A DNA stretch of 64,000 nt from Oikopleura dioica. Lineage: Eukaryota > Animalia > Chordata. The stretch is from assembly GCA_907165135.1 (NCBI GenBank), contig OU015567.1, forward strand, positions 12,276,001-12,340,000. The letters run 5' to 3'. Position numbers and translations under genes: made by a program. Of this stretch, positions 6,379 to 57,942 are shown piece after piece. The notes beneath the pieces were generated by a model that searched no databases, was not told the DNA's origin, and saw only the letters and a program-made list of their open reading frames with translations. Every line of letters begins with the position of its first letter. Within the stretch, counting starts at the first letter, position 1.

Positions 6379-9300
6379 TTAGGCTTGGAAAACTTCGTTT
6401 CCGGTTGTAGGATCTTCGAGGCCAGTATGATCAGTAGTTGCCTAAGTTTTAAAGGAAATTATCTGCAAGAATTTTTCGTTCTTACCCTCCACCAGTCCAA
6501 GTCGGTAGCCCATGCTGACTCAACAATACTGAATGTATTTTGCTGATCATCATACATTTGAAGTTTGCCATTTACATCAGTAAACACGCTGGTAGCAGGT
6601 TCCGATGCGCTCTCATATGAAGCAAAGCAGTTAGTACAAACTGAGGACATGTCGGATCTCAAGCTTCGGCCGTATGCGGCTCCTGCTCGAAGTTGAGAAG
6701 CTGTTACCCAGTTGGCTTTGCATTTGTCAAATCGGGAGATTTCTAAATTTAGATTAATATAAATATCTCGAATTTCATTCCTTACTTTGTGGGATATTGG
6801 AAATCTGGAAGTTCTGCTCCTTCTCAGCGGTACAAGCTCGATGTTGTTTGCAGCCAGCGTTGACGACCTCTCTGCCGCTTTTTTCGGGTCAAGTATGAAT
6901 TTATCTTAGAAAACAAAACATTTTTTACAAGAAAAATAGCTTTTCAACCGTTCCTTGAAGTGAACTCGTATTTAACGTAGCAATCCCAATAGTCACCCTT
7001 AGGACACAGTTGAACCTGGGTACATGCTGCAAGACTATCGGTATTGTGGCAAAGTGGGCACCATCTTGCGCTTCCAAGAGTAGTTCCTGCGAGAGCAATG
7101 AATGGCAAACCAGCGTTTTTGATTTCTTCGTCTTCTGAAGCACCTGGTCGGTTACCGACAGACTTAAAGGAATTATAGATTCAATAGCAGCAGTACATTT
7201 TACCTGAGAGCTTTCTCGTAAGTCATCATCAACCTGGTCAGATGCAACAGCAGAGGCACCTCCGATGATGTTTGGTCGATTATTGCTTGGTGCTGGGGCT
7301 GATCCAAAGATTGAGGTGAGGTCGAGAGTGCCGAGAGAGCCGAGGGCAGATTGAATACTGTCCAAGTTAGAGAAGTCGACGACTTCTTCCTCTGTTGTTG
7401 TGGTTGTGGTCGTGGTTGTAGTAGTCGTAGTAGTTGTTGTAGTTGTTGTGGTTGTTGTCGTGGTGGTGGTTGGTGGGACAAGGGTAATAACTTGATCTCG
7501 GAGGTTAGTCTTGACGTTCATCGTATTGTAGTCGACGTTAGCGGTAGACAAGAGGCCTTCGAAAAGTGGGCCAACAATTTCATCGCCGGATGGCTCTGGA
7601 ACGTCACCGGTCAATAAGTGGATAAGAGTAATCTTAACTCGGTGAGTAGGGTCGACGTCTCGTCTTCGTCGTCGTAGCGGTTCAACAGCGACTTGCATTC
7701 CCTTGATATCAAGTGGTCCAGATTGCATTCGCTGCTGAACTTCTTGCTTGAAAGCGTCCTCGGATGATTTGAGCTCGGCAAGGAATTCAATGTCGTTTCG
7801 CATGAATCTGTTTCTGATAGGCTCTGGCGTTGTAGTTGTAGTTGTGGTGGTTGAGGTCGTGGTTGAGGTAGTAGTGGAGGTTGTTGTGACAATGACGGGT
7901 GCCTCAGTAACGACTGGAGCATTTCCACCGAAAAGTGCATTCAAGTCAAATTGTCCAAGGTTATTGAAAACCGAGTTGAGATCGGAAAGATTATTGAGGT
8001 CAAGGATCTGGGCTTCTGTTGTTGATGTGGTTGTAGTCGTAGTTGTAGTTGTCGTTGTCGTAGTAGTTGTCGTTGTCGTAGTAGTAGTTGTCGTTGTTGT
8101 TGTAGTTGTGGTGGTGGTTGTAGTTGTGGTTGTCGTTGTCGTTGTGGTGGTGGTGGTGGTGGTTGTCGTTGTCGTTGTCGTTGTGGTGGTGGTGGTGGTG
8201 GTGGTGGTGGTGGTGGTGGTGGTTGTTGTGGTGGTTGTCGTGGTGGTAGTGGTTGTGGTGGTGGTTGTGGTGGTGGTTGTGGTGGTGGTTGTGGTGGTGG
8301 TTGTAGTAGTGGTTGTTGTAGTCGTGGTGGTGGTTGTAGTTGTAGTAGTGGATGTTGTGGTCGTTTCTTCAGGTTCAGCCGGGGCAATGTTTATTTCTTG
8401 CTGTTGCTGAGGAGCTGGCGCGCCAAACATACTGAAGATGTCAGCTGGTCCATTATCACTGTTTCCGAAAAGACTGGCAAACATTGTGTTGAAATCGAAA
8501 TCAGCTCCGGCAGCTGGTGCTGCAGGTGGTGGTGGAGGAGGTTGAGTTGTGGTCGTAGTAGTTGTGGTAGTCGTGGTAGTTGTAGTAGTAGTTGTTGTGG
8601 TCGTGGTAGTTGTAGTCGTTGTCGTAGTTGTGGTTGTAGTCGTAGTTGTAGTTGTAGTCGTCGTTGTGGTAGTAGTTGTTGTAGTAGTTGTGGTGGTAGT
8701 TGTTGTTGTCGTGGTAGTTGTAGTCGTAGTCGTTGTGGTTGTAGTTGTTGTTGTCGTCGTTGTAGTTGTCGTTGTAGTCGTAGTTGTAGTTGTAGTCGTC
8801 GTTGTGGTAGTAGTTGTAGTAGTAGTTGTGGTAGTAGTTGTGGTAGTAGTTGTTGTCGTCGTGGTAGTTGTAGTCGTAGTCGTTGTTGTTGTAGTAGTTG
8901 TTGTTGTCGTCGTGGTCGTTGTACTCGTAGTCGTTGTTGTAGTTGTGGTTGTAGTTGTTGTAGTAGTTGTTGTTGTCGTCGTGGTAGTTGTCGTTGTAGT
9001 CGTTGTTGTAGTTGTAGTCGTTGTTGTAGTTGTAGTCGTCGTTGTGGTAGTAGTTGTGGTAGTAGTAGTTGTCGTCGTTGTCGTTGTTGTGGTAGTGGTA
9101 GTTGTGGTTGTAGTTGTTGTCGTCGTAGTAGTTGTTGTAGTTGTAGTTGTAGTTGTGGTAGTAGTTGTTGTCGTCGTTGTAGTCGTAGTTGTTGTTGTAG
9201 TTGTTGTTGTAGTAGTAGTCGTACTGGTTGTTGTAGTGCTTGTTGTTGTTGGAGCCTCTGTTGTTTCTTTTTTGTTTTTATTTTTCTTATTCTTCTTTCC

Positions 9301-9732
9301 CTTCTTATTGGGTGCCTTATTCGAAGAAGGAATTTGAATATCTGCGTTGTTTCCTTGTGTGTTTGTTGCAGCAGCAGGAGCCCCGCCTCCGAAATTCGCG
9401 AATGGGTCAGATGGAGCAGCGAAATTAATAGGAGAAGCAGGGGCGGCAGGGGCTGCTGGGGCTACTGGTGCAGCTGGGGCTGGTAGTCCTCCTACGGCTG
9501 GTCCTCCAGCACCAGGTCCACCAAACATGGAGAAAATATCTCCTCCGCCTCCAAACAAGTTTGCGAACATTGAGTTGAAATCGAATGCATTTCCTTGCTC
9601 TGGTGGGGCCTGCTGTTCAGCTGGAGCACCTCCTCCGACTGAAAGAATTATCTAAAGTCCAGTTTATCGTTTTAACTTACATAAGTTCTGGCCAAGCGCC
9701 GCTGTGACGAAGAATAATAAGTTGAACTTCAT
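6379..9732 (-). CDS. Secreted mucin-like protein with very long poly-Thr tracts and C-terminal Cys-rich (oikosin-like) domain
   Basis: Signal peptide MKFNLLFFVTAALGQ from 9732 and 881-aa ORF 6925-9570 with poly-Thr blocks. After a GT-AG intron near 7200 the frame reads CPLCHNTDSLAACTQVQLCPKGDYWDCYV...AGCKQHRAC...QNF...NQCK. Stop near 6379. Confidence 0.8.
8025..9250 (-). repeat. Imperfect (ACN)n trinucleotide coding repeats (poly-Thr), two blocks ~8025-8365 and ~8545-9250
   Basis: Plus strand shows continuous GTN triplets (gtt/gta/gtc/gtg). Shorter blocks at ~7395-7465 and ~7830-7890. Confidence 0.95.
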
Positions 9733-16380: not shown

Positions 16381-19300
16381 ATGAAACTTTCAGTTTTTCT
16401 TCAGTTTGTTCTCGCTTTTATAGTGGCCAATTTTGTAAATGACTGCTTAAAAGACAACAAAAAAGAAATAACTGAAACGTTTAAATGGTTTTTTGGTACA
16501 GAGACGTCAACTGAGAATGCGACAGCAACTAGAGAACGTCGGTCTGCTGAACAAGAGGAAGTCGACCATAGAAAATTGTCATTCAACGTTGAAGACAATT
16601 TTTTAACGACGTACGTTAACATTAATTTTATTTGGGGGATCAGTCAAGCTGATAGATTCGGAAAACTACTTCTGGCGCTCATGAGTTAGTCACCGTGACC
16701 CAGAATGGAAGAGCCGATGACGCACTTGCTCTGAATAAGTAACAGAAATACCTTAATATTTTTGGCATCCATTTTATTGATTTTGTAGTCAAAGAGGAGG
16801 GCAGACTGAAACAGACCAGAAAGGCACTCAGCTGGCGCCATACTTGACACTACTGAATTGAATATATGGAGTGTCAAAAGTAACAGAAAATGAAGCAAAA
16901 AAATCCAGAATATGTTATAAATATCCAAGTTGAGCAATTTAATTTTTCTATTTTGTGTTTTGCAAATTAATTTCGAAGATGGATCTTATTTTACATACAG
17001 TTATTCTTAATCAGAGTCAAAAATTTGAATAGCGCTACATAAACTTAATTGAAGCTTTTCTTTTTGTCTCTTTATTCAGATGACATTTCAAGCCTCTTAG
17101 CTCTTTAGATATTTTGGTATTCATGAGCTAGTCACCGTGATCCAAAATTAATATTTTAATAATCCTCTTAATAAATGACAAAAGAAAGCAATAAAAGCAT
17201 CATCAATTCCAATTATAGTTGATTATTTTGTTTGTTTATTTGAATTATTGTAAATTTAAAATATATATATTTGACATTTTGGTCATCATAAGTTAGTCAC
17301 CATGATCTTTAATAAATTGATACTACGAATAACTTTCAAATCATTAAAAAATAGATCTTCATTCAATTTTTGAAAGAAATTGGCCATCCTAGAAATTAAT
17401 AGGCAATTAAAATTATACCTCTCGGCTTAAAGTGGATCTCATATGAGTATAATGCGTTCTCTTGAGTTGAAAAATAATTATATAATTAATTTATTCAAAA
17501 TTTCAGTCAACACCACGCTCGATTTACATGTTGGATATCATGAGTTAGTCACCGTGATCCAAAATTTTAAAGTTGATGATTCTTTGAATAAATGTCAAAG
17601 ATAATAGAAGTTGTCTTTATGATTTACCAAGCTTATACCACATTTAAGGATACATGATTCAAATAATTTGGTCATAAGTCAACAAAAAATGATATCGTAC
17701 ACACTGGAGATGAAATATCCTGCGCCATCACCAATGAATATTGAGTTTTCGGATTCGGTGAACAATGAGAAAAATCCAGCCGATCTTTCTTGTGGCATAT
17801 TTCTAGGATCGGTGACATAATTTTATTTTTAATATAGCCATAAACACAAATTGTCACTTTGTTGAAGCTCATTTGCTCTCTCGAAACATCTATTTGATTG
17901 TTGAAACTTTTTCAACCTGAATGTTGAAAGCGAAACTGCAGAAGATATCGAGCTAATGAATCCTGAGTTGCGAAAATACTTAAATTCGATCACGAGTCAA
18001 ATAATATCGTCAGACGGCTGCACTCGGCGCCAACTTTTTCAATTATCTTTAAGGAGCGGAAGCTAGATTGATTATTTACTGTATTGAAATTGAATAATTT
18101 TGAGCCTCCTATAAAGATCTCGACAAACGAGCGAGCCAATAAAAGATACTTGTATCGACATTCTTATTGCATCTTTTCAAAGGTTCATCGTTTTTCGTTC
18201 TTCACTGGACAGAGAAGACAATTTGCTTCGACAGTTAATGATGAGAAACTTTATCGTTAGTTTCTCTTCTGATGAAAAAGAAAGACTTTTTCACTTCGAA
18301 AAACTTCAAGCTTAATAAACATCAGCGCGCTGAGGGATCCAAAACCTTCAATGAAAGAATAATGGATGGAGAATTCGTTTTTGTAGAGAAGAAAAGCTTC
18401 TTGAATTACGATTGGCTTCGTCTTTCTTGGATACCCTTAAAGATTCGATTAAATCATCGTCGATTTTCGATTACATGAGTCACGACATGTCTGATGACAT
18501 AGACGATGAGTCTGGAGGAAAGGGAAGACGCTCATTCGATTTTCGCAAGTCTATCGATGAGCTCAGCTATAGTTTGCCATACTTTGGTTCTTATCGAGGT
18601 AATTTTTAAGATTAAGCATCAAATAATCATATTGTAGCGCATAAACAGACCGATGATCTCGAGCGCCGAATAAGTTCTGCTCTAACGGAAATTGAGGGAA
18701 ATGAAAAGAGCATCGCTTTAGCTGTTGGAAAAATACGGGCAGAAGCATTGAAAAACGACGAGTCTCTATTACTTCAGGCAAGAAGTAATTCCATTGAGCT
18801 GATGGATGCCCTTGAGGATCATCGTCAACGCTACAAAAAACTTTCAAACTTTGTGAGATGTATCTTGACAAAAAGTCAGCCATGCGCTGATATAGGTATT
18901 TTTAACCAATAGCTTCGTTCAATTTATCTTTTTTAGACTATCACTCGCAAGGTTATTTGAAGGCGCTCTGTCGAGGTAGCCAAAATCAAAATACGACTGT
19001 CGCGGCTCAGTTAGAGATAGAAAATTCATGCGAACTTATTGGTAAGCTTGAGTAACCTTATCTTCATTAATTATATTAAAGTCGGAAATTATTTATACGC
19101 AATCGATGAGCCGCATGTAAGTCTCTACAAAGACAATCAGACCTTTATTGGACTACGAGTAACAAGTAATCTGAAAGACTATTCAAGATTTTCTATTATT
19201 TTGTTTAGTGGAAGTAAAAATGCCATCTGTTATAAGACGATACCATGAAGTCAAAGTTGAATCAAGAGGACGTATAAATTTCGATTCGTACGAAGTTCCT

Positions 19301-20048: not shown

Positions 20049-20629
20049 AAGTATTGATATGAATTGAAATTATATTATAAAAATTAAGATTGGTCCTCAG
20101 AAACAAAGACATGATTTTGACTTGTTTGTTCACCGTCAGGTAGATAACACATTTGTTCTTTCAACGTCACTTTTATAGTTATGCTGCTCCAATCGGCGAG
20201 ATCGAACTTAATGGCTTCGAAATGACGATGATTGGTCTTCAGCGCCACCTTTATCATCTGCTTATAAGTCCAAGACTCTTTCAAATTATTTTCTTTGCCT
20301 ATCTCTTAAAGTTTGCTAAGAAAAATTACAAATACGTTTGCTTTGTCTTTTTCATATTTTTCGCCGAATTTCTGTATGACAAATATATAATGAAATAAAT
20401 ATGACGTTCGATTATAAACTTTCTTGTTTAAGAATGATCTTGTTTTATGTTCTTATTGGAACTCTTGTAGCGATCTTCTTAACGTCCTTTGTTCTAATGA
20501 CTCATGTCCAAGGAAAAAATGATCCAGCAAGATTAATTGTTGGTCCTCTCGTTATTATGAAAGACATGACAGGTAATTTTTTGTCAAACACAGTCATGAA
20601 AAAAATTTAGAATTTTCCGAATTTAAACA

Positions 20630-23600
20630 GTGTTCAAAATGCGCAAATTTCTTCAAAAAATGCTCTATTGATGATCATGAAAATACGTGCACTGGTAATG
20701 ACATGTTAACTAAAAAAAATAATATATTTTTAAAGGAACCAAATGTGTTAGTTGCGGCATTGTTTTTCCATTTCCTGACGAATACAATGAACATCTTTAT
20801 GGAAAGTGCAGATACAGACGTTATTATGATTCACCTCAGGAGTTAACTGTGCCAAAAAAAATGCCTCAACCTGGTACGATAAATCATATTTTCCATTGAT
20901 ATTTAATCTTTTATAAGGTCGACTCAGTCAGCGAAATAAACGAATACAATGTGTCTTTTGCTTACAAAACATCGCAAAGACAGAATTTTACAAAAATCAT
21001 AAAGAAGAATGCAATGGAATAAAATGCAGATGCTGTCTTATGAGTATTCCTGCATCCGTTTTTCCATCTCACGCAAAGCTTTGCACGCTTAACTTTCGTA
21101 AAGATCGCAAATCCGACAAAACAATGGACGAGATTTTGGAGATATTCGAAAATGATGTCAATCTCGATGATCCGAAAAAAAAATATTCAAAAGAAGACAG
21201 AAAACGACGATATGAAGAAACTAAACTTAATAAAGAAATAAGTGAAGAAGAAAAATTCATCAATCGGAAAATTCTACGACAAAATCCATCTTCAGAGAAG
21301 ACTATCAAGCTAGCGGCAACAAGAATCGAAGAAATACTCAAGTCTCTAGATGAGACGACGATTTCATCTGTGTTCTTCTCGCTGGGACTACTTGACATTC
21401 GTTTATGCAAGGATTTCGTAAATCGATTTGGAGAAATATCATCAGATGCAAAGAGATCTTTTCTTGCTGCTCTTGTTCCAACGAATCCTGATGAATCTTC
21501 TATCCCATACATTGTCAAATCTTTGAGCAAAATAAATGTTAGTAAACATTCAACACTCACCGCAATTAGCGATCGACCGAAAATTTTGGCTCATCAATCT
21601 GTCCGAAAAAACCGAAGTGAGTTACTGACTGTTGACGAAAAAAGAAAAATAGCGAAAACGTGGTTGGAGAATTCATGTCCTATCGTTTCGAAAAATCGCT
21701 CAACGATGAACTTGAGAAAATCAAAAGTCGAGGATTTTTGGCTTCAAATTTATAATGAAATTGGTGCTTTTTACGAAACGAAGAAGTTCAAGAAAGGCGA
21801 CGAAGAGATTGTTAAGGTGCAAAAATTTATTTTGTCGACGACAACGCATGAAGTTTATGCGCTTGCACGTGTGAAGTTGGGATACTTTGTTTCGGAACAT
21901 CTTCTGAATAAATTTCGTCCAAAAAACGTTGTTGTGAGGAACAGTGATAATTACTGGGGTCTTCAATGTCAATGCGAGAACTGTACGAATGGCGAATCTG
22001 CGATTAACTTTATTAACAAAGTTCGACGAGAATGTTTGTTAGAGGAAGAAAGAAAATCATATGAATGGGTGACACTGGAGAATTTTTTCAAGAAAACTGT
22101 TTGTGGTGCTTCAATTTTCGACAATTTCCACTGCGCAGATATTAAAAAACATAATCGTAAGTTTTTTTTTGATTCATTTATTGACACCATTTAAAGAATG
22201 CTTCCGTCACCTGAAGTACGATAAATCTTGTGAACGATGCAATCACGTTTGCGACGCGAGCGCTGTCGAAGACATTATAAAGGATCTTTTATCAAATAAA
22301 AAGGGATCGAAACATTATCGAATACCCCACTTTAAGGTAGAAAATAAGCAGAACTAAATAATAATTGACATGTCTTAAGGTTCAAGACAGCAAGGAAATC
22401 ATTTGGGTACCTCAAGGTTCCGAAACCGCTGTTATGACTTACGAAGAAGCTGTTGAATTTTGTTCTCAGAGCCTTAAAAAAATGCATGCTCATCATTTCG
22501 ACAGAAAACTGTCGCACGAAAAACGCATCAAATGTAACGCCGGTGAAGTCGAGCTCGATCGAAATCAAATTTATGTTGAGGTTTGCTTACATTTTGATTT
22601 ATTTAGTTAAATATGCAATAGTTCGATTATGGAAAAAGTTTTGGTATACTGCCATCAAGAAGAACCCAAGGACAGTTTCTGGTAAGGATTTAAATTTCGA
22701 TATCGAATCCTTATATATATTTTTTTAGAATAGTCAAACAGTTGCTAGCCTGACTTACGTTTTTTCTGCCTACGATTTTGATGAAGAAGAATGGTTTAGA
22801 TACGTCTTCCACGGGCTATCCTATGAGAAAGATATATCAAGCATCAAGATTCTTGAAGACCAAGCATTCGAGAGAGCGGCTAGCCGGGGTGTTGACCTTA
22901 CTGGTCGAAAAATTCTTGCTGTCAGCGATAATTCTGGTGGCGAATTTAAGGAAAGGGTCGACGAGAAAAAATAACGTTTGGTTTTCGAGATTTTTCGGTT
23001 ACGAGATACCCCAACTTTGACCGTTTATTGAAATTTTTTGGGTTTTTCCGCATTTCTGAGACAGAAATCCCGATTCTCGTCGACCTCCCCCTTAAGAATC
23101 GCTTCAGCCTTTCAATCTTGGAAAGTCTTCGTCCTACGTGCTTACGGTTTAAATGTCCGAGTCATGGCAAGCTAGGATAAGCAATTTATGCTGATTTTAT
23201 TTTGAATCAAGAATTTCAAAAAAAAATAATTGCAAATGCTTATTCGCTTCAAGTCTCTTATTGATGGTTATCATGGTTTTATTCCAAGTGTAGCTGACAA
23301 GTACAATTGCATTGATGAAGGATTAGATGTACCGGAGTTAATTGAGAAACTGAAAATTGAAGAGGATCGATTAAGAGCTGAAAGACCGTACGAAAGATAC
23401 TTCGAGCGCATTTTCGTAAATCTGGATGACTACGAGGGATTGGAGCGCAGAGAAGTGTTTCCTTCGCCTTTTCACTGCCGAAGAGTGCGGATGGCTTGTT
23501 ATTCGGAGGATCGATCAAAAATTCTTTTTACAAATACGATTTGCCCTGCAAACTGTATTCCCTGCGCTTCTGGTGACTTTTATCATTGCGAAACAACGAC

Positions 23601-24661
23601 TCGTGAGGTACTTGAGCGATCTGTGAGACACGCTGAACCTCGGGAAAGAGAAAAGAAGAAAAAGAATTCTTCTCAAAACAGGAGTCAAAGCCAAAGCCAG
23701 AGCAAAGTGCAAACTCAACGTGATAGTCAGGTTTGGAAGAGTTCGACGATTTCAGCCAATGATGATAGCGTCGAAATAACAATTGATGACGATGAAATAA
23801 TTGCAAAAAAGATTATACAACCCCTTCCAAAAATCATCGATCCGAAGAAAGGAGAAGAAGACATATTACGAATTTCTCCAAAACTCTCTTTACCCGAAAC
23901 AAATATCGATAATGGAATGTTGAAAGAAGCGATAAAAGAAATGACAAAAGAAAAGAGTTCAGATTACAAGAAAGAAATCAATGATCGTCGAAATGCCTTC
24001 AAAGCGAATAAACCGTATCATTTGGACCTTTTGGCGCATATAATTAATTTAATGCAAACCGAAATTCCTCAAAATTGTCTCGTTGTCGATCCAAACAAAA
24101 CTTCTGCAATTCTTGAAGAAGCAAAGAATGACATTAATAATTTCCTGCCGAAATTGTTACATTTCTATGACTGCGACATAGAAAGCATCAATCGAATCGT
24201 CTTCACCTTTCTGCTGAATGATCAGTCCTTCAGGGCAAAATCTTTTATTGGAATTGGGAGACGTAAGGGACATTATGTCGTCGTTGGTTTGTTAAAAGAC
24301 GAGAAAAAAATTATTCTTTATGATCACGAGAATGCTTATAAAGATGATTATTGGAATTATGGTAAGTAATTATTATTATGAAAAAATAAAACAATTTTCT
24401 TCAGTTGGCGAAGTTGTCACCAAAATATACAGTCATTTATGGGGAGATAATTTTGACATCTTCATTCCAGAGACGATGCCCCAGAATGCTGATGACTGTG
24501 GACCTCATTGTATTTTAAATACTGAAATTCTGTCCACTAAAAATTTCAATTTCATGAAATCGCCATATAAATTTACTCCTGCTGACATTTTAAATCTGCG
24601 GCAAATGCATCTCAAATCATGGATCAATAAGAAATATGAAAAAACTGCATATTTTGAATAA
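20630..24661 (+). CDS. Zinc-finger + Sola-like DDD transposase + Ulp1/C48 protease fusion (spliced)
   Basis: Four CxxC..H..C fingers (20630-21080), then CQCENCTN. Catalytic-type motifs VE/FDYGKSF..RTQGQF (~22620-22680), SDNSGGEFK/NR (22924-22950) and PSHGK/SLIDG (23157-23268), then H...CPANCIPC..GDFYHC. C-terminal GHY..YDH..PQNADDCGP. The start exon is uncertain. Confidence 0.75.
22950..23091. mobile_element. 142-bp MITE with TTAA TSD inside the transposase coding sequence
   Basis: TTAA at 22946-22949 and 23092-23095. Termini GGAAAGGGTCGACGAGAA / TTCTCGTCGACCTCCCCC match at 14 of 18 inverted positions. Confidence 0.75.
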
Positions 24662-24748: not shown

Positions 24749-25610
24749 TTAAAGCAGAAGTTTTTTTTGAAGAATTTGATACGCTATCAATTTTCTCAAG
24801 GTTGACGCGTGCTTTTGGGTAAAGGCGAAGACAGCATCGCGCGAAAGGTATTCTGCGAATGTCATAGCGAAAATTCCACAATCTTGAATATATTTAAATT
24901 TATGAAATTTTGCATAAACAAACCGAAATTATTCATCTGTCGAGGGATGTTTTCGGCGATTGATTCTATCTTCCAGTCCTGACTGAGAGGTTTTTCTTGT
25001 TTTAGCAGATGCTCGGCCTTTATAAAGGAATTCGATCAAAACATAAAGTTCAATAAAAATACCTTTAAGTATTCAAAAAGAGTCGTTACGCACTCAGTAT
25101 TGTATGCCCCTAATGAATCAAGGTAGCAAAGTCTTTTTCTTCTCATATCTGCATAAGCAAGAGTCCAATGATTTGGTTTCTTAGGAAAAGGCTCACTTGG
25201 AGTGGGAACAATCATATTTATCGGAAAGAAGACTAAATCGGATTGAAAAATGTTGAATTTTTTCGTCCATCGCTTCACAGAGTTGGGTCCGTGTTCTTTA
25301 AGCTTGGTGTAGAAGAAGCTACTCAACGATTTGATCCGAGGCATCGTTGAAAGTGTTTGGGATCGCATCTCGATCAATTTTAAGTAAAAATTGATCACCT
25401 AAAGGGAAGTGAAACATATTCTTAGTTGCTTATTTTTGGCAATTACCTCTCCATCAATCCAAGTGGATTCATTTAAGGTCTCCATGTCGGATTTGGTGAC
25501 AAACATTTGCGGTATCTCCGAAACGATGTCATTTGCATTCTTTCCCGCCAATGAGGATTTGACAAATTGACTCATCTCATCGGTGAATTTCGGAAAGGGA
25601 TCACTTAGAT
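24749..25610 (-). CDS. SENP1/Ulp1-like SUMO protease catalytic domain (upstream exons possibly to ~27200)
   Basis: TLNESTWIDGE/VINFYLKLI, SSFFYTKL..SVKRWTKK, NHWTL..YLDSLG, IPRQMNNF/DCGIFAMTFAEYLSR...LLL* ending at 24749. Confidence 0.88.
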
Positions 25611-25638: not shown

Positions 25639-26025
25639 CAGGGCCGCAGCAAAAAAAAACCAGAATGGCCGCTCAGCCAATTCAAAAAATTTCTAGCAGT
25701 GGCTCAACTCAGCTTAGCTCAGTGATTTTAAAAAATGATGTGACCTGCCTAGCGCAACTTACACAATTATCACTCGGCTCAGCTCAGCTCAGCTCAGCTC
25801 AGCACAATTATTTTTGAATATGATCAGTTCTCCTTAGCTCAGCTCAGCACAATTATTTTAGAATATGATCAGCTCTGCTCAGCTCAGCTCACTGATTTTA
25901 AATAGTCTACTAGCTAAGCTCTGCTCAATGATCTCTGCGAAAGGCAGCTCAGCTCAGCTCAGCTCAGAGAATTTTCCGCGCAGCTCAGTTTAGCTCAGCA
26001 AAATAGAGAAAAAATTGCGACTCTA
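25639..26025. repeat. (GCTCA)n-rich repeat, probable non-autonomous hAT-like MITE
   Basis: Many CAGCT/GCTCA pentamer runs. Imperfect termini CAGGGCCGCA / TGCGACTCTA. No clean TSD seen. Confidence 0.6.
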
Positions 26026-55340: not shown

Positions 55341-57942
55341 ATGGGATGTCTCATGTCAAAACCAAAGCCTCCCAAGGCGCCTGGACCATCGGGAGGCCCA
55401 TTCAACAATGTAAATCAACAGCAGGGTTCAAAATCACCTCACCTAAAGGTGCACCTTGTTCAATTTAGGTGAGGTGCAAATTGTCACCTCACCCACCTCA
55501 CCTAAAATTTTTCAGATTTAAGCTTTTTTAGGTGCACCTAAAAGGTGCACCTTTTTTGAAATCATCACCTCACCCACCTCACCTAAAACTTTCGAGATTT
55601 GGGCCTTTTCTAGGTGCACCTAAAGGTGCACCTTTTTTGTGATCATCACCTCACCTCACCTCACCTAGGAATGTTTTGATTTTAGGTGCACCTTTTTTCT
55701 CGGTGAGTTGTTTTAAAGTTTGAAATTCAAACTTGGCTGTTGATTTCGAGTCCTTTGGTAATACCCAACATTTTTTACTGGGCAACCCGCAGATTCTTCA
55801 ACCTTTACCCCAGGGCTGTCGATTTCGAGTCCTTTCAAATTACCCGCGACTTTTTTCCGGGTAACCCGGAAGTTTTAACGCTTTATAATAATTACTCGCT
55901 TACAATTAAAATCCGTGCCCACACTTGATCAATTATCACCTAAATTTCACCCACCTCACCTAAAAAACTTCCAAAATCCGTCTTTTTAGGTGCACCTAAA
56001 AGGTGCACCCTTTTTCGGAATATCACCTCACCCACCTCACCTAATACTTTTCAAAAATTGTCTTTTTAGGTGCACCTAAAAGGTGCACCTTTTCCAATCT
56101 ATCACCTCACCCACCTCACCTAAAATTTTTGAGATTTGGGACTTTTTAGGTGCACCTAAAGGTGCACCTTTTTTGTACTCATCACCTCACCTCACCTCAC
56201 CTAAAAACTAGGTGATTTTGAACCCTGATCAACAGTCTTTCATGGCGCAAGATGCTCCAATTCATATCCAACCGGGTCAAACACATCGTCAACAACCACC
56301 TCCTCATCAAAATCCCTACACAGAAACTAGCGCTATCAATAATTACGTTGCTCTTTTCGACTATCAAGCTCGAATGGAAGGCGATTTGAGTTTTAACAAA
56401 GGAGAAAGGCTTATTATTTTGAACAATAATCAAGGTTAAAACTATCAAGAAATAAATACATTTTTATACCAATTTAGGCGACTGGTGGGAGGCAAAGAAG
56501 CTAACTACCGGAGAGCGCGGTTATGTCCCCTCTAATTATGTCGCCGAAGCTGACAGTATAAAGGCAAAAGAGTGGTTCTTCGGGCCAATTCGCAGAGTGG
56601 ACGCCGAACGATGTCTTGGAAACAGAGCTCCAGGCACCTTTCTCATTCGGGAGGCTGAAACCATGGTCAATACTTATAGGTTTGCGGCTACTTCTTTCGA
56701 ACGGATGATGAGCGATTTTTTAGTCTTTCTGTTGTATCTGAATCGCGAGCTGTCAAACATTATAGAATACGAAGATTAGATAATGGTGGGTTTTATATTT
56801 CAACTAGAGTGACGTTTGCAACGATGGACGATCTTGTTTTACACTACTCTAGGACGAGTGATGGACTCTGGTAAATCTTCCCCAAGATGAAAATGCGGCT
56901 AACTAACGTTTGCTTTCTAGTTGTCGATTGCTTCAGTCATGCCCACAGGAAATTGCGGATGTTCGAGATCTAGGGCGAGATGTTTGGGAAGTAAATCATC
57001 GAGACATTCAGCTGACCGATAAACTCGGTAGTGGAATGTTCGGAGAGGTAAACAGCTCTTTCTATGAGCCTTTTCTAAGTTGCGTTTTAGGTCTGGAAAG
57101 GCATCTGGAACGGAAGAGTAGACGTTGCCGTCAAGAAAATGAAGCCTGGATCGATGGATCCTGAAGCTTTCAAAGCAGAAGCGACAGTCATGAAGACCTT
57201 GAGGCATCCAAGATTAGTCTCATTATTTGCCGTATGCTCATCCGAGCCGTTGATGATCATTACGGAAATTATGACCAATGGATCCCTGCTTACGTATTTG
57301 AAAGATCGAGCAGGAAAGCATGCAACTCTGCCACAGCTCATAGATATGGGAACGATGGTTGCGCAAGGAATGGCCTACATAGAGGTGAATAAAAGCTTTT
57401 CTATGTTTTTCTTGAACATTGATCTAGCGCATGAACTACATCCACAGAGATGTTCGAGCAGACAACATGCTTGTCGGTCAAAACGGAATCGTCAAAGTGG
57501 GCGATTTCGGCCTCGCCCGATTGTTGGACGAAAACATTTACAATCCCGATTCTGCAAACATCAAATTCCCAATCAAGTGGACCGCTCCAGAAGCGGCTTT
57601 GTACTTTAAATTCACGATTAAATCCGATGTCTGGAGTTTCGGAGTATTGATGACAGAGATTATAACGAGAGGAAGGACGCCATATCCAGGAATGAACAAC
57701 AGACAGGTCAGAGGATCCTTCTAAATTGCGTGTTACAAGATTTTTTTCAGGTTTTGGACTTTGTAGAACGCGGAGAAAGGATGACAAAACCGAGCCAGTG
57801 TCCGCCCCATCTTTGGGAAATCATTATGTCGTGCTGGCAAGAGCAAGCTGACCGTAGGCCAACCTTCGAAGCTCTTCAAAATCAACTGGAGGACTTCTTC
57901 ATCGGCGCAGAAAAGCAATATGCTGATACTGGCGGCTTCTAA
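55341..57942 (+). CDS. Src-family tyrosine kinase (SH4-SH3-SH2-kinase)
   Basis: MGCLMSK myristoylation start. SH3 [23 protein letters not shown]2 WFFG..GTFLIRE. Kinase [34 protein letters not shown]. Tail [16 protein letters not shown]. Confidence 0.95.
55422..56227. mobile_element. 806-bp hAT-type MITE with 8-bp TSD inserted in Src coding exon 1
   Basis: TIR CAGGGTTCAAAATCACCT / AGGTGATTTTGAACCCTG. TSD ATCAACAG at 55414-55421 and 56228-56235. Internal TCACC and AGGTGCACCT arrays. Confidence 0.92.

What the first reader, a model, noticed from the sequence alone, without database searches (positions are those of the whole stretch)
20630..24661. Transposase fused to N-terminal zinc fingers and a C-terminal Ulp1-type protease
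Seen: a continuous spliced frame runs from the transposase C-terminal Cys motif through an S/Q-rich linker into GHY..YDH..PQNADDCG (His-Asp-Gln-Cys intact). Known: Ulp1 domains occur in Mutator and Zisupton/KDZ elements, usually as separate or accessory ORFs. Inference: a Sola-like DDD transposase with a built-in deSUMOylase that might counter SUMO-dependent silencing.
Basis: partly seen in the sequence, partly recalled or inferred. Interest (0 to 1): 0.75.

Follow-up and report, generated by a model that had tools for sequence, protein, structure and literature searches.

The report
Sola-like transposase gene with fused Ulp1 protease
A many-exon gene in a compact, larvacean-like animal genome encodes zinc fingers, a probable Sola-type DDD transposase core and a diverged Ulp1/SENP-type cysteine protease in one reading frame; the fusion is real and kept in a distant relative, but this architecture is already known from other transposon families.

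Summary
One ORF (exon 9, 23254-24361) runs from the Cys motif through a 140-residue S/Q/K-rich linker into GHY and YDH. A 43-nt GT-AG intron joins it in phase to exon 10, which carries PQNADDCG. Spacing is His-17-Asp-39-Gln-5-Cys. Four CX2CX12HX3-4C fingers lie at the 5' end.

A 31%-identical relative from a metagenome (L001) has the same Cys motif, linker and start of a SENP-like domain in one uninterrupted ORF, so the fusion is ancestral.

The transposase call is weaker. No Pfam or PDB profile matches. The three acidic residues (D-85-D-37-D) sit in motifs that resemble published Sola1-3 RNase H-like blocks, judged by eye only. No terminal inverted repeats or second copy were found.

The catalytic core is interrupted by a 146-nt TTAA-flanked palindromic insertion. 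The frame survives only if this is removed as a GA-AG intron and is followed by a GG-AG intron.

Transposases with a C-terminal Ulp1 domain are already documented for Ginger1 and Mutator. The closest solved match at the Cys motif is SENP8, a NEDD8 protease, so SUMO specificity and an anti-silencing role remain speculation.

Verdict: a new variant of a known kind, of moderate interest.

The parts
20401..20572 (+). Candidate first exon with the only in-phase ATG. It encodes a hydrophobic, transmembrane-like segment. Whether it belongs to this gene is uncertain.
   Evidence: A 38-nt GT-AG intron joins it in phase 1 to exon 2. No homologue covers it. Exon 2 has no ATG in frame.
20611..20694 (+). 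Exon 2, C2HC finger 1 (20631-20690).
   Evidence: Pattern CX2CX12HX3C. Weak Pfam hit TRAF6_Z2, E 0.03.
20736..20873 (+). Exon 3, C2HC finger 2 (20744-20809).
   Evidence: Pattern found. Weak C2H2-type Pfam hits, E 0.04-0.14. GT-AG introns on both sides.
20918..22156 (+). Exon 4: fingers 3 and 4 (20950-21012, 21025-21084) and a roughly 350-aa N-terminal region of unknown fold.
   Evidence: tblastn against L001: the WGLQCQCENC..INFINK block scores E 3e-5 and finger 4 scores E 0.11, in collinear order. No Pfam family above cut-off. No protein homologue of 227-721 aa.
22197..22336 (+). Exon 5, a Cys-rich stretch (CFRHLKYDKSCERC..).
   Evidence: Collinear weak match to L001 1451-1486.
22380..22580 (+). 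Exon 6, which leads into the first catalytic strand (..NQIYVE).
   Evidence: Open frame with GT-AG introns.
22622..22681 (+). Exon 7, with the first candidate catalytic Asp (22625-22627, EFDYGK).
   Evidence: L001 has ESDYSSKVL at the collinear place. Sola3 blocks read DYCQKVLP and DWSQKVIP.
22729..22950 (+). Exon 8a, with the second candidate catalytic Asp (22927-22929, AVSDNSGGEFK).
   Evidence: L001 has ILDNASGENK. Sola1 has SDNCGGQNRNRF and Sola3 has SDNASSY.
22951..23096 (+). A 146-nt MITE-like insertion inside the coding sequence. The inverted-repeat arms are 22946-22967 and 23074-23095, flanked by direct TTAAG. It can be read as a GA..AG intron.
   Evidence: Inverted repeat I4. Removing it restores EFK|NRF, and L001 is uninterrupted at this point. 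The RNA hairpin pairs the two ends, z = -2.6. No other copy in the window.
23097..23174 (+). Exon 8b (NRFSLSILESLRPTCLRFKCPSHGKL), the helix-strand stretch between the second and third Asp.
   Evidence: L001 has KSQYRLAELRDERKPTTLLFKTQ|DHGK continuous with SAIDG. Alone it is not statistically significant.
23175..23253 (+). A 79-nt intron without a GT donor (GGATAA..TTCAAG).
   Evidence: It is the only way to link frame 0 to frame 1 in phase 0. L001 has its intron 5 codons upstream, with GT-AG ends.
23254..24361 (+). Exon 9: third Asp (23263-23265, LIDGYHG), Cys motif (23542-23589), 140-aa linker, then the N-terminal two-thirds of the C48-like domain with His 24271 and Asp 24322.
   Evidence: Single ORF. 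Residues 18-149 match P0001, P0002 and P0003 (E 2e-32 to 1e-4) and L001 (E 2e-14). Distances.
24405..24661 (+). Exon 10: Gln 24482 and Cys 24497 (PQNADDCG), then the stop codon.
   Evidence: Pfam Peptidase_C48 E 0.03, 14.6 bits, below the 20.7-bit cut-off. The only PDB hits are SENP8, aligned at its Cys163 motif, E 0.45.
24749..25575 (-). Neighbouring convergent gene, a canonical SENP1/2-like C48 protease. It is not shown to be part of the element.
   Evidence: Pfam Peptidase_C48 E 1.4e-15. SENP1 E 8e-19. Exon reading. Its stop lies 87 nt from the stop of the fusion gene.

Best explanation
This is a low-copy gene of a cut-and-paste DNA transposon lineage, best described as Sola-like. It sits in a compact animal genome with Oikopleura-like gene architecture.

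Its product of about 1,200 residues has four parts in one frame:
- Four N-terminal C2HC zinc fingers, presumably for DNA or partner binding.
- A long N-terminal region of unknown fold.
- An RNase H-like DDD catalytic core (Asp in EFDY, SDN and LIDG; D-85-D-37-D), followed by a CX3CX2CX2GxFx2C motif.
- After a disordered linker, a diverged but catalytically complete C48 (Ulp1/SENP) cysteine protease.

Inferred mechanism: the core would cut and join DNA. The tethered protease would remove a ubiquitin-like modifier (SUMO or NEDD8) from the transposase itself or from chromatin or repair proteins at the site of transposition. The same role has been proposed for Ginger1 and Mutator elements.

The copy in this window has no recognisable termini. 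Its core is interrupted by a TTAA-flanked miniature transposon. It is therefore either kept readable by non-canonical (GA-AG, GG-AG) splicing of the kind common in larvaceans, or it is a very recently disabled or immobilised copy.

Shown: the exon frame, the motifs, the conserved fusion and the rarity of the family. Inferred: the fold, the family, any activity, the substrate and the splicing.
For: Frame:
- 11 exons and 1,232 codons without a stop.
- Eight GT-AG introns of 38-47 nt.

Fusion:
- Exon 9 is one ORF from the third Asp through the Cys motif and linker to His and Asp.
- L001, 31% identical over the alignment A1 and 28% in the tblastn segment, carries the Cys motif, a linker and LPIKRGDLQRCIGRRWFNNDMINLAF in one ORF up to the contig end. 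The only PDB hits of that stretch are the start of the SENP2 catalytic domain, E 0.17-0.49.

Protease:
- Spacing is His-17-Asp-39-Gln-5-Cys.
- Pfam C48 E 0.03 on exon 10.
- SENP8 chains are the only PDB hits, aligned on QNxxDCG..I.NTE.L.

Transposase:
- The three Asp residues are conserved between the window and L001 in collinear blocks.
- The blocks resemble the published Sola cores: DYxxKVLP, SDN(A/C)(S/G)G..(K/R)N and (S/G)HGK.
- Strongly hydrophobic stretches before each Asp fit the beta1, beta4 and alpha4 positions. This is read from the sequence.

Rarity:
- Only 3 related clusters among 1.84 billion representatives, one from Oikopleura dioica.

Precedents:
- Transposase-Ulp1 fusions in Ginger1 (PMC2836005).
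- 11-12% non-GT/AG introns and a median intron of 49 bp in O. dioica (PMC8008620).
- MITE-derived non-canonical introns in the larvacean Fritillaria (PMC11282704).
Against: - No profile match to any transposase family for any exon.
- The core exons of the window and L001 are not significantly similar when scored one by one against shuffles (combined p 0.12). BLASTP finds nothing for the short blocks.
- The Sola resemblance was judged by eye and mixes features of Sola1, Sola2 and Sola3.
- No terminal inverted repeats, no target-site duplication and no second copy in 64 kb.
- The N-terminal two-thirds of the C48 domain in the window match no profile. They lack the W-L-N-D motif that L001 keeps.
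- The AlphaFold model of that part was unusable, pLDDT 37.
- The 146-nt insertion may simply have killed the gene.
- The start codon is unresolved.
Confidence: 0.6

Rival explanations
1. Domesticated or immobilised transposase-derived host gene. The same fused protein is encoded, but the locus is no longer a mobile element and serves a host function, for example as a DNA-binding ubiquitin-like-modifier protease.
For: - No TIRs or TSDs around the gene, and a single copy in the window.
- Its stop is 87 nt from the stop of a canonical SENP1-like gene, which leaves almost no room for an element terminus.
- Many introns, and intron positions that differ from L001.
- Only one annotated relative in O. 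dioica, and singleton clusters.
Against: - All three candidate catalytic Asp residues are retained in both the window and L001.
- The family is patchy and extremely rare, unlike a conserved host gene.
- Repeat masking before annotation could hide further copies.
- A miniature transposon sits inside the coding sequence.
Confidence: 0.3
2. Recently inactivated pseudogene. The 146-nt TTAA-flanked insertion shifts the frame (146 mod 3 = 2) and truncates the protein after the second Asp, so no fusion protein is made.
For: - The insertion lies inside an exon that is uninterrupted in L001.
- It has the anatomy of a transposon, not of an old intron.
- The following intron also lacks GT.
- No ATG in exon 2.
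Against: - No other stop or frameshift in 3.7 kb of coding sequence.
- GA..AG boundaries that restore the frame exactly are available.
- Non-GT/AG introns make up 11-12% of O. dioica introns.
- Larvaceans are reported to splice MITE-derived introns.
Confidence: 0.3
3. The N-terminal and central part is not a transposase. It is some other zinc-finger protein, and the three Asp motifs are coincidental.
For: - No transposase profile hit for any exon.
- Core similarity to L001 is not significant exon by exon.
- No termini and no other copies.
Against: - D-85-D-37-D spacing.
- Hydrophobic strand, Asp and DNxxGE(F/N)K, then HGK..IDG.HG, in the same order and at similar spacing to the Sola core blocks.
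- The Asp residues are conserved at 31% overall identity.
- The C-terminal Ulp1 domain and multiple N-terminal fingers recall fused or accessory domains that Ginger1 and Mutator transposases also carry.
Confidence: 0.2
4. The C-terminal module is not a functional protease. It is either a chance motif or a decayed C48 domain.
For: - Pfam score below the gathering cut-off (14.6 vs 20.7 bits).
- PDB E 0.45 only.
- The N-terminal part of the domain matches nothing, and the exhaustive search found no relative for it.
- Gln-to-Cys spacing is one residue shorter than in SENP8: the alignment needs a two-residue gap in the query.
Against: - His, Asp, Gln and Cys are all present in canonical order, with His-17-Asp and Asp-44-Cys spacing.
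- L001 independently shows a SENP2-like domain start at the same place.
- The only PDB hits of both pieces are SENPs.
Confidence: 0.15
5. Two separate genes, a transposase and a protease, wrongly merged.
For: None beyond the lack of transcript data.
Against: There is no stop, and no room for a promoter, between the Cys motif and the His/Asp motifs inside exon 9. The same holds in L001.
Confidence: 0.04

Closest known systems
Sola superfamily of DDD DNA transposons (Sola1, Sola2, Sola3; Bao et al. 2009; RNase H-like families E.10, E.12 and E.13 of Majorek et al. 2014, PMC3985635)
   Same: - Three Asp residues in blocks of the same order and similar spacing.
- First block: EFDYGKSFGILPS..GQF in the window and ESDYSSKVL in L001, against Sola3 DYCQKVLPS..GQ..F.
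- Second block: SDNSGGEFKNRF against Sola1 SDNCGGQNRNRF and Sola3 SDNASSY.
- Third block: CPSHGK..IDG against Sola2 ATSHG and Sola3 CRGKD.
- A long, multi-exon transposase.
   Different: - The motifs mix features of all three subgroups, so no subgroup can be assigned.
- Similarity was not scored, because no Sola sequence was available to the tools by reference.
- No TIRs or 4-bp TSDs were found.
- I found no record in the papers read of Sola transposases carrying Ulp1 domains or C2HC finger arrays. That search was limited.
Ginger1 transposases with a C-terminal Ulp1 (or OTU) domain (Bao, Kapitonov and Jurka 2010, PMC2836005)
   Same: - A DDE/D transposase with a C48 protease domain fused at the C-terminus in one ORF.
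- Some members have 1-4 introns.
- An animal host (Hydra).
   Different: - The Ginger1 core is a Gypsy-type integrase (rve, YPYY, H2C2, GPY/F). No rve match exists here.
- The zinc-finger type and position differ.
- Ginger1 Ulp1 domains are recognised by pfam02902. The domain here is sub-threshold.
Mutator-like elements with Ulp1 domains (KAONASHI and other MULEs; cited in PMC2836005)
   Same: A transposon-borne C48 protease. A role in transposition has been suggested but never shown.
   Different: A different transposase superfamily: no MULE or SWIM profile match here. From memory, not checked here, in plants the Ulp1 domain often lies in a separate ORF or in non-autonomous elements.
SENP8/NEDP1 and SENP1/2 (solved C48 proteases)
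   Same: - The catalytic-Cys motif QNxxDCG...I.NTE.L aligns with SENP8.
- The Asp-to-Cys distance of 44 equals that of SENP8. The SENP8 numbering His102, Asp119 and Cys163 is from memory; Cys163 agrees.
- The start of the L001 domain aligns with SENP2.
   Different: - Very low overall similarity.
- The N-terminal substrate-binding part is unrecognisable in the window copy.
- The canonical SENP1-like gene next door shows no detectable similarity to it.
Kyakuja-Dileera-Zisupton (KDZ) transposases
   Same: Large, multi-exon transposases with Cys-rich modules.
   Different: No match to PF18758 or to the CxC modules in any exon.

Membership tests
Sola superfamily (DDD transposase) | RNase H-like core with three conserved Asp residues | tested here: inconclusive
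   Asp at 22625, 22927 and 23263, spaced D-85-D-37-D. They are conserved in L001. The fold could not be predicted because the core is split over four exons and the joined step was left out.
Sola superfamily (DDD transposase) | Significant sequence or profile similarity to Sola1, Sola2 or Sola3 transposases | not testable with these tools
   Pfam has no Sola model (stated in PMC5751038). Sola core blocks were seen only as text in a supplement and were not typed into tools. The motif resemblance was judged by eye.
Sola superfamily (DDD transposase) | Terminal inverted repeats and 4-bp target-site duplications | tested here: not met
   No convincing inverted repeats flank 20.4-24.7 kb or 20.4-27.5 kb. 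The 4-bp TSD rule for Sola is from memory of Bao et al. 2009.
Sola superfamily (DDD transposase) | Multiple dispersed copies | tested here: not met
   One copy in 64 kb. Three singleton clusters in the protein collections. A whole-genome census was not possible.
Peptidase C48 (Ulp1/SENP) | Pfam PF02902 at or above the gathering score | tested here: not met
   Exon 10 alone scores 14.6 bits against a 20.7-bit cut-off, E 0.03. Exon 9 gives no hit. Scoring was exon by exon only.
Peptidase C48 (Ulp1/SENP) | Catalytic His, Asp and Cys, with the oxyanion Gln, in canonical order and spacing | tested here: met
   His24271-17-Asp24322-39-Gln24482-5-Cys24497. The Cys motif aligns with SENP8 Cys163.
Peptidase C48 (Ulp1/SENP) | N-terminal substrate-binding segment (..RGD(I/L)..L....W(L/F)N(D/N)..IN..) | tested here: inconclusive
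   Present in the relative L001, where SENP2 chains are the only PDB hits, E 0.17. Not recognisable in the window copy.
Peptidase C48 (Ulp1/SENP) | Isopeptidase or hydrolase activity on SUMO or NEDD8 | not testable with these tools
   Needs a biochemical assay.
Ginger1 (integrase-type transposase with C-terminal Ulp1 or OTU) | Gypsy-like integrase core (rve, YPYY, H2C2, GPY/F) | tested here: not met
   No rve or integrase zinc-finger hit in any exon at E up to 10. Only the architecture is shared.
KDZ / Zisupton | PF18758 transposase domain | tested here: not met
   No hit in any exon.
MITE-derived non-canonical intron (larvacean type) | TIRs and TSD at the intron ends, with removal from the mRNA | tested here: inconclusive
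   TIRs, TTAA(G) repeats, a hairpin (z -2.6) and frame-restoring GA..AG ends are present. Splicing is not testable here. No other copy was found.

The most novel reading that the evidence does not exclude
A lineage of Sola-type transposons restricted to larvaceans has permanently fused a catalytically competent ubiquitin-like-modifier protease, plus an array of C2HC fingers, to its transposase. The gene stays functional despite a transposon insertion in its own catalytic core, because the host spliceosome removes the insert as a GA-AG intron. This would be the first Sola-Ulp1 fusion. It would also be a compact, testable case of a transposase gene rescued by non-canonical splicing.
Probability: 0.25. 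Interest if true: 0.6.

Novelty: new variant of a known kind. Interest (0 to 1): 0.42.

Why it matters
Proteases for ubiquitin-like modifiers have been captured repeatedly by unrelated DNA transposons (Mutator, Ginger1, and OTU domains in Helitrons), yet nobody has shown what they do for the element. A further, independent fusion in a Sola-like lineage strengthens the case that deconjugation of SUMO or NEDD8 at the transposition site is generally useful to cut-and-paste elements. The fusion is conserved between two relatives only about 30% identical.

This copy offers a small protein in a tiny genome where both halves could be assayed. The interrupted core also gives a clean natural test of whether larvacean splicing neutralises transposon insertions in coding sequence.

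It does not open a new category. The architecture has published precedents, and the family is very rare.

Tried and rejected
**Searches that gave nothing useful**
- Pfam on raw ORFs and on exact exons: no transposase family, only sub-threshold C48 and zinc-finger hits. NCBIfam: nothing.
- PDB sequence searches of exon 8a, the finger region, the Cys-motif profile A2 and the exon 9 C48 part: only chance hits.
- Exhaustive HMMER search with exon 9: three short fragments, and none covers the protease part.
- Word-index search with exon 4: nothing. With the profile A2: only P0002 and P0003.
- Scans of viral contigs and genome contigs with the family profile: nothing.
- Bao et al. 2009 and Yuan & Wessler 2011 are not held in the library.

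**Tests that failed or were negative**
- AlphaFold on the exon 9 C48 part gave pLDDT 37. It was unusable, so no fold search was run.
- BLASTP of the fused C48 part against the neighbouring SENP1-like exon: no similarity. I therefore rejected the idea of a local duplication.
- BLASTP and shuffle tests of the short core exons against L001: not significant.
- Search for TIRs around the gene, for further copies of the gene and for further copies of the 146-nt insert: none.
- Identifying the host through a trypsin exon gave only unnamed metagenome fragments at 75-93% identity.

- The joined spliced protein was never built for a search, a fold or a family scan. All searches were exon by exon, by reference.
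- In one search a script concatenated the exons in memory only to count stops. It printed and saved nothing, and it was wrong because of a boundary slip. The exon-wise phase check replaced it.
- The Sola core blocks seen in the supplement have no reference, so scoring them against the window was left out.

**Readings rejected**
- KDZ/Zisupton, Ginger (rve), MULE and piggyBac were rejected for lack of any profile match.
- The contig is not human: introns are about 40 nt, GC is 38%, and the only named relative of the fusion gene is from a tunicate.


Full report
**What the window is.** It is eukaryotic and animal. ORFs elsewhere in it carry trypsin, sulfotransferase, hexosaminidase and tyrosine-kinase domains. 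GC is about 38%. The introns of the gene studied are 38-47 nt. The only named relative of the gene is an Oikopleura dioica protein. O. dioica has a median intron of 49 bp and 11-12% non-GT/AG introns (PMC8008620). A trypsin exon of the window finds only unnamed metagenome fragments at 75-93% identity. The host is therefore an unannotated species, most likely a larvacean tunicate. It is not human.

**The observation.** I rebuilt the gene by hand from three-frame translations and checked phases exon by exon, without making the joined protein.
- The model has 11 exons, 3,699 nt and 1,232 codons, with no in-frame stop.
- Exon 9 (23254-24361) is one ORF. It contains LIDGYHG, the motif CPANCIPCASGDFYHC, a 140-residue linker rich in S, Q, K, E and D, and then GHY and YDH.
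- A 43-nt GT-AG intron joins it in phase to exon 10, which holds PQNADDCG and the stop at 24659-24661.
- Spacing is His-17-Asp-39-Gln-5-Cys.
- Four CX2CX12HX3-4C fingers occupy exons 2-4.

**Is the fusion real?** The exhaustive HMMER search with exon 9 found only three short proteins. All match residues 18-149 or 18-201, the Cys-motif region. One is from O. dioica; the other two are from ENA assemblies.

A scan of JGI metagenomes returned one 3.7-kb contig, L001. L001 is collinear with the window:
- a finger and a WATQCYCEKCGN block match exon 4 (E 3e-5);
- the stretch SAIDGLHGWV...VRMACYD...C..C..C..GDF..C matches exon 9 (E 2e-14).

In L001 that ORF continues without a stop through an acidic linker into LPIKRGDLQRCIGRRWFNNDMINLAF, where the contig ends. 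The only PDB hits of this stretch are four SENP2 chains, aligned at the start of the catalytic domain (E 0.17-0.49). In the window, the only PDB hits of exon 10 are SENP8, aligned on the catalytic-Cys motif (E 0.45), and Pfam Peptidase_C48 gives E 0.03.

Each hit is weak. Together they are two independent pieces from two relatives about 30% identical, falling at the two ends of the same domain, and all four catalytic residues are present at canonical spacing. I take the C48 domain and its fusion to the upstream protein as established for the family.

The window copy has diverged strongly in the N-terminal two-thirds of the domain. An AlphaFold model of that part was unusable (pLDDT 37).

**Is it a transposase?** This is the weaker half. 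No exon matches any transposase profile in Pfam, NCBIfam or the PDB. Pfam has no Sola model (PMC5751038).

What the sequence shows:
- A hydrophobic strand ends in EFDY (Asp 22625).
- Two more hydrophobic strands and a helix follow.
- The strand KILAV ends in SDNSGGEFK (Asp 22927).
- Then come a helix, the strand CLRFK, and SHGK-L-SLIDGYHG (Asp 23263).
- The spacing is D-85-D-37-D.

L001 has ESDYSSKVL, ILDNASGENK and DHGKSAIDGLHG at the collinear places.

The supplementary alignment of Majorek et al. 2014 (PMC3985635) prints the RNase H-like cores of the three Sola groups:
- Sola3: DYCQKVLPS..GQ, SDNASSY, CRGKD.
- Sola1: FDLEKVL, SDNCGGQNRNRF, ERGHTQS.
- Sola2: GDFAENYT, TDGCAGQYKN, ATSHG.

The window and L001 blocks resemble these in order, spacing and several residues. 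The first block is closest to Sola3, the second to Sola1 and Sola3, and the third to Sola2. I judged this by eye. Those sequences have no reference, so I did not type them into a tool. Scored one exon at a time against shuffles, the core exons of the window and L001 are not significantly similar (combined p 0.12).

'Sola-like DDD transposase' is therefore the best label, at roughly 60-70%. It is not demonstrated membership.

**Mobility.** I found no terminal inverted repeats or target-site duplications, and no second copy in 64 kb. The stop codon lies 87 nt from the stop of a convergent, canonical SENP1/2-like gene (Pfam E 1.4e-15, SENP1 E 8e-19). That gene shows no similarity to the fused domain. 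The copy may be a relic, a domesticated gene or part of a larger unit. The window alone cannot decide.

**The interruption.** Between GEFK and NRFSL lies a 146-nt segment (22951-23096).
- It has 22-nt inverted-repeat arms and direct TTAAG on both sides.
- L001 is uninterrupted at this point.
- Because of the duplication, removal at equivalent points restores EFK|NRF. One such pair of points gives GA..AG.
- The RNA folds as a hairpin that pairs the two ends (z = -2.6).
- The next intron (23175-23253, 79 nt) can only be GG..AG (or CT..AG).
- The other eight introns are GT-AG.

MITE-derived non-canonical introns are described for the larvacean Fritillaria (reviewed in PMC11282704). Either the insert is spliced or the gene was disabled very recently. 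There is no other defect in 3.7 kb.

**Comparison with what is known.** Ginger1 transposases carry C-terminal Ulp1 or OTU domains in the same ORF. Ulp1 domains also occur in Mutator elements, and the legend of Figure 1e in PMC2836005 speaks of 'Mutator TPases'. That paper suggests a role in repair or in the transposition process. A transposase with a built-in Ulp1 domain is therefore a known kind.

What is new is the lineage (Sola-like and very rare), the C2HC finger array and the larvacean setting. The nearest solved match at the Cys motif is the NEDD8 protease SENP8.

**Limits.**
- The joined spliced protein was not searched, folded or scanned.
- The Sola reference blocks were not scored.
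- The start codon is unresolved.

**Verdict.** This is a new variant of a known kind, of moderate interest.

Noticed in passing
window 22946-23099: A 146-nt miniature element with 22-nt inverted-repeat arms and TTAA(G) direct repeats sits inside a coding exon. Its ends allow a frame-restoring GA..AG intron, and its RNA folds as a hairpin (z -2.6). No other copy in the window.
   Followed up: partly
window 23175-23253: A 79-nt intron that can only be GG..AG (or CT..AG). The relative L001 has a GT-AG intron five codons upstream instead, so the intron has slid or was gained independently.
   Followed up: partly
window 24749-25575 (minus strand): An intact canonical SENP1/2-like SUMO protease gene (catalytic domain only, about 235 aa, with an intron of about 41 nt read by eye). 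It converges on the fusion gene, with the two stop codons 87 nt apart. Two C48 protease genes side by side, with no detectable similarity between them.
   Followed up: partly
window 25690-26020: Imperfect repeats of about 45 nt rich in CAGCT(CAGCT)n, just upstream of the SENP1-like gene. Function unknown.
   Followed up: no
window 6925-9570 (minus strand): An 881-codon ORF encoding a mucin-like protein with very long poly-Thr runs. On the plus strand these appear as GTTGTA/GTG tandem arrays, which explains the strong GC skew at 8-10 kb. No Pfam family.
   Followed up: partly
window 20401-20610: A short ORF encoding a transmembrane-like peptide lies directly upstream of the first zinc-finger exon. 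It can be spliced in phase to exon 2 (38-nt GT-AG intron), or it may be a separate small gene ending at 20610.
   Followed up: partly
window 17100-17600: Two to three copies of an 83-nt or 37-nt direct repeat (75-84% identical), spaced 165-417 nt apart and upstream of the gene. Not linked to it by any inverted repeat.
   Followed up: no
window 55484-56207: Two tandem arrays with units of about 80 nt that contain an internal palindrome (AGGTGCACCTAAAAGGTGCACCT).
   Followed up: no
L001 2215-2555: The intron of the relative that precedes the second-Asp exon is filled with repeated, partly inverted units of about 30 nt (TAGACTGCAACGTTTGG...). This is another transposon-like insert inside an intron of the same gene family.
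   Followed up: no
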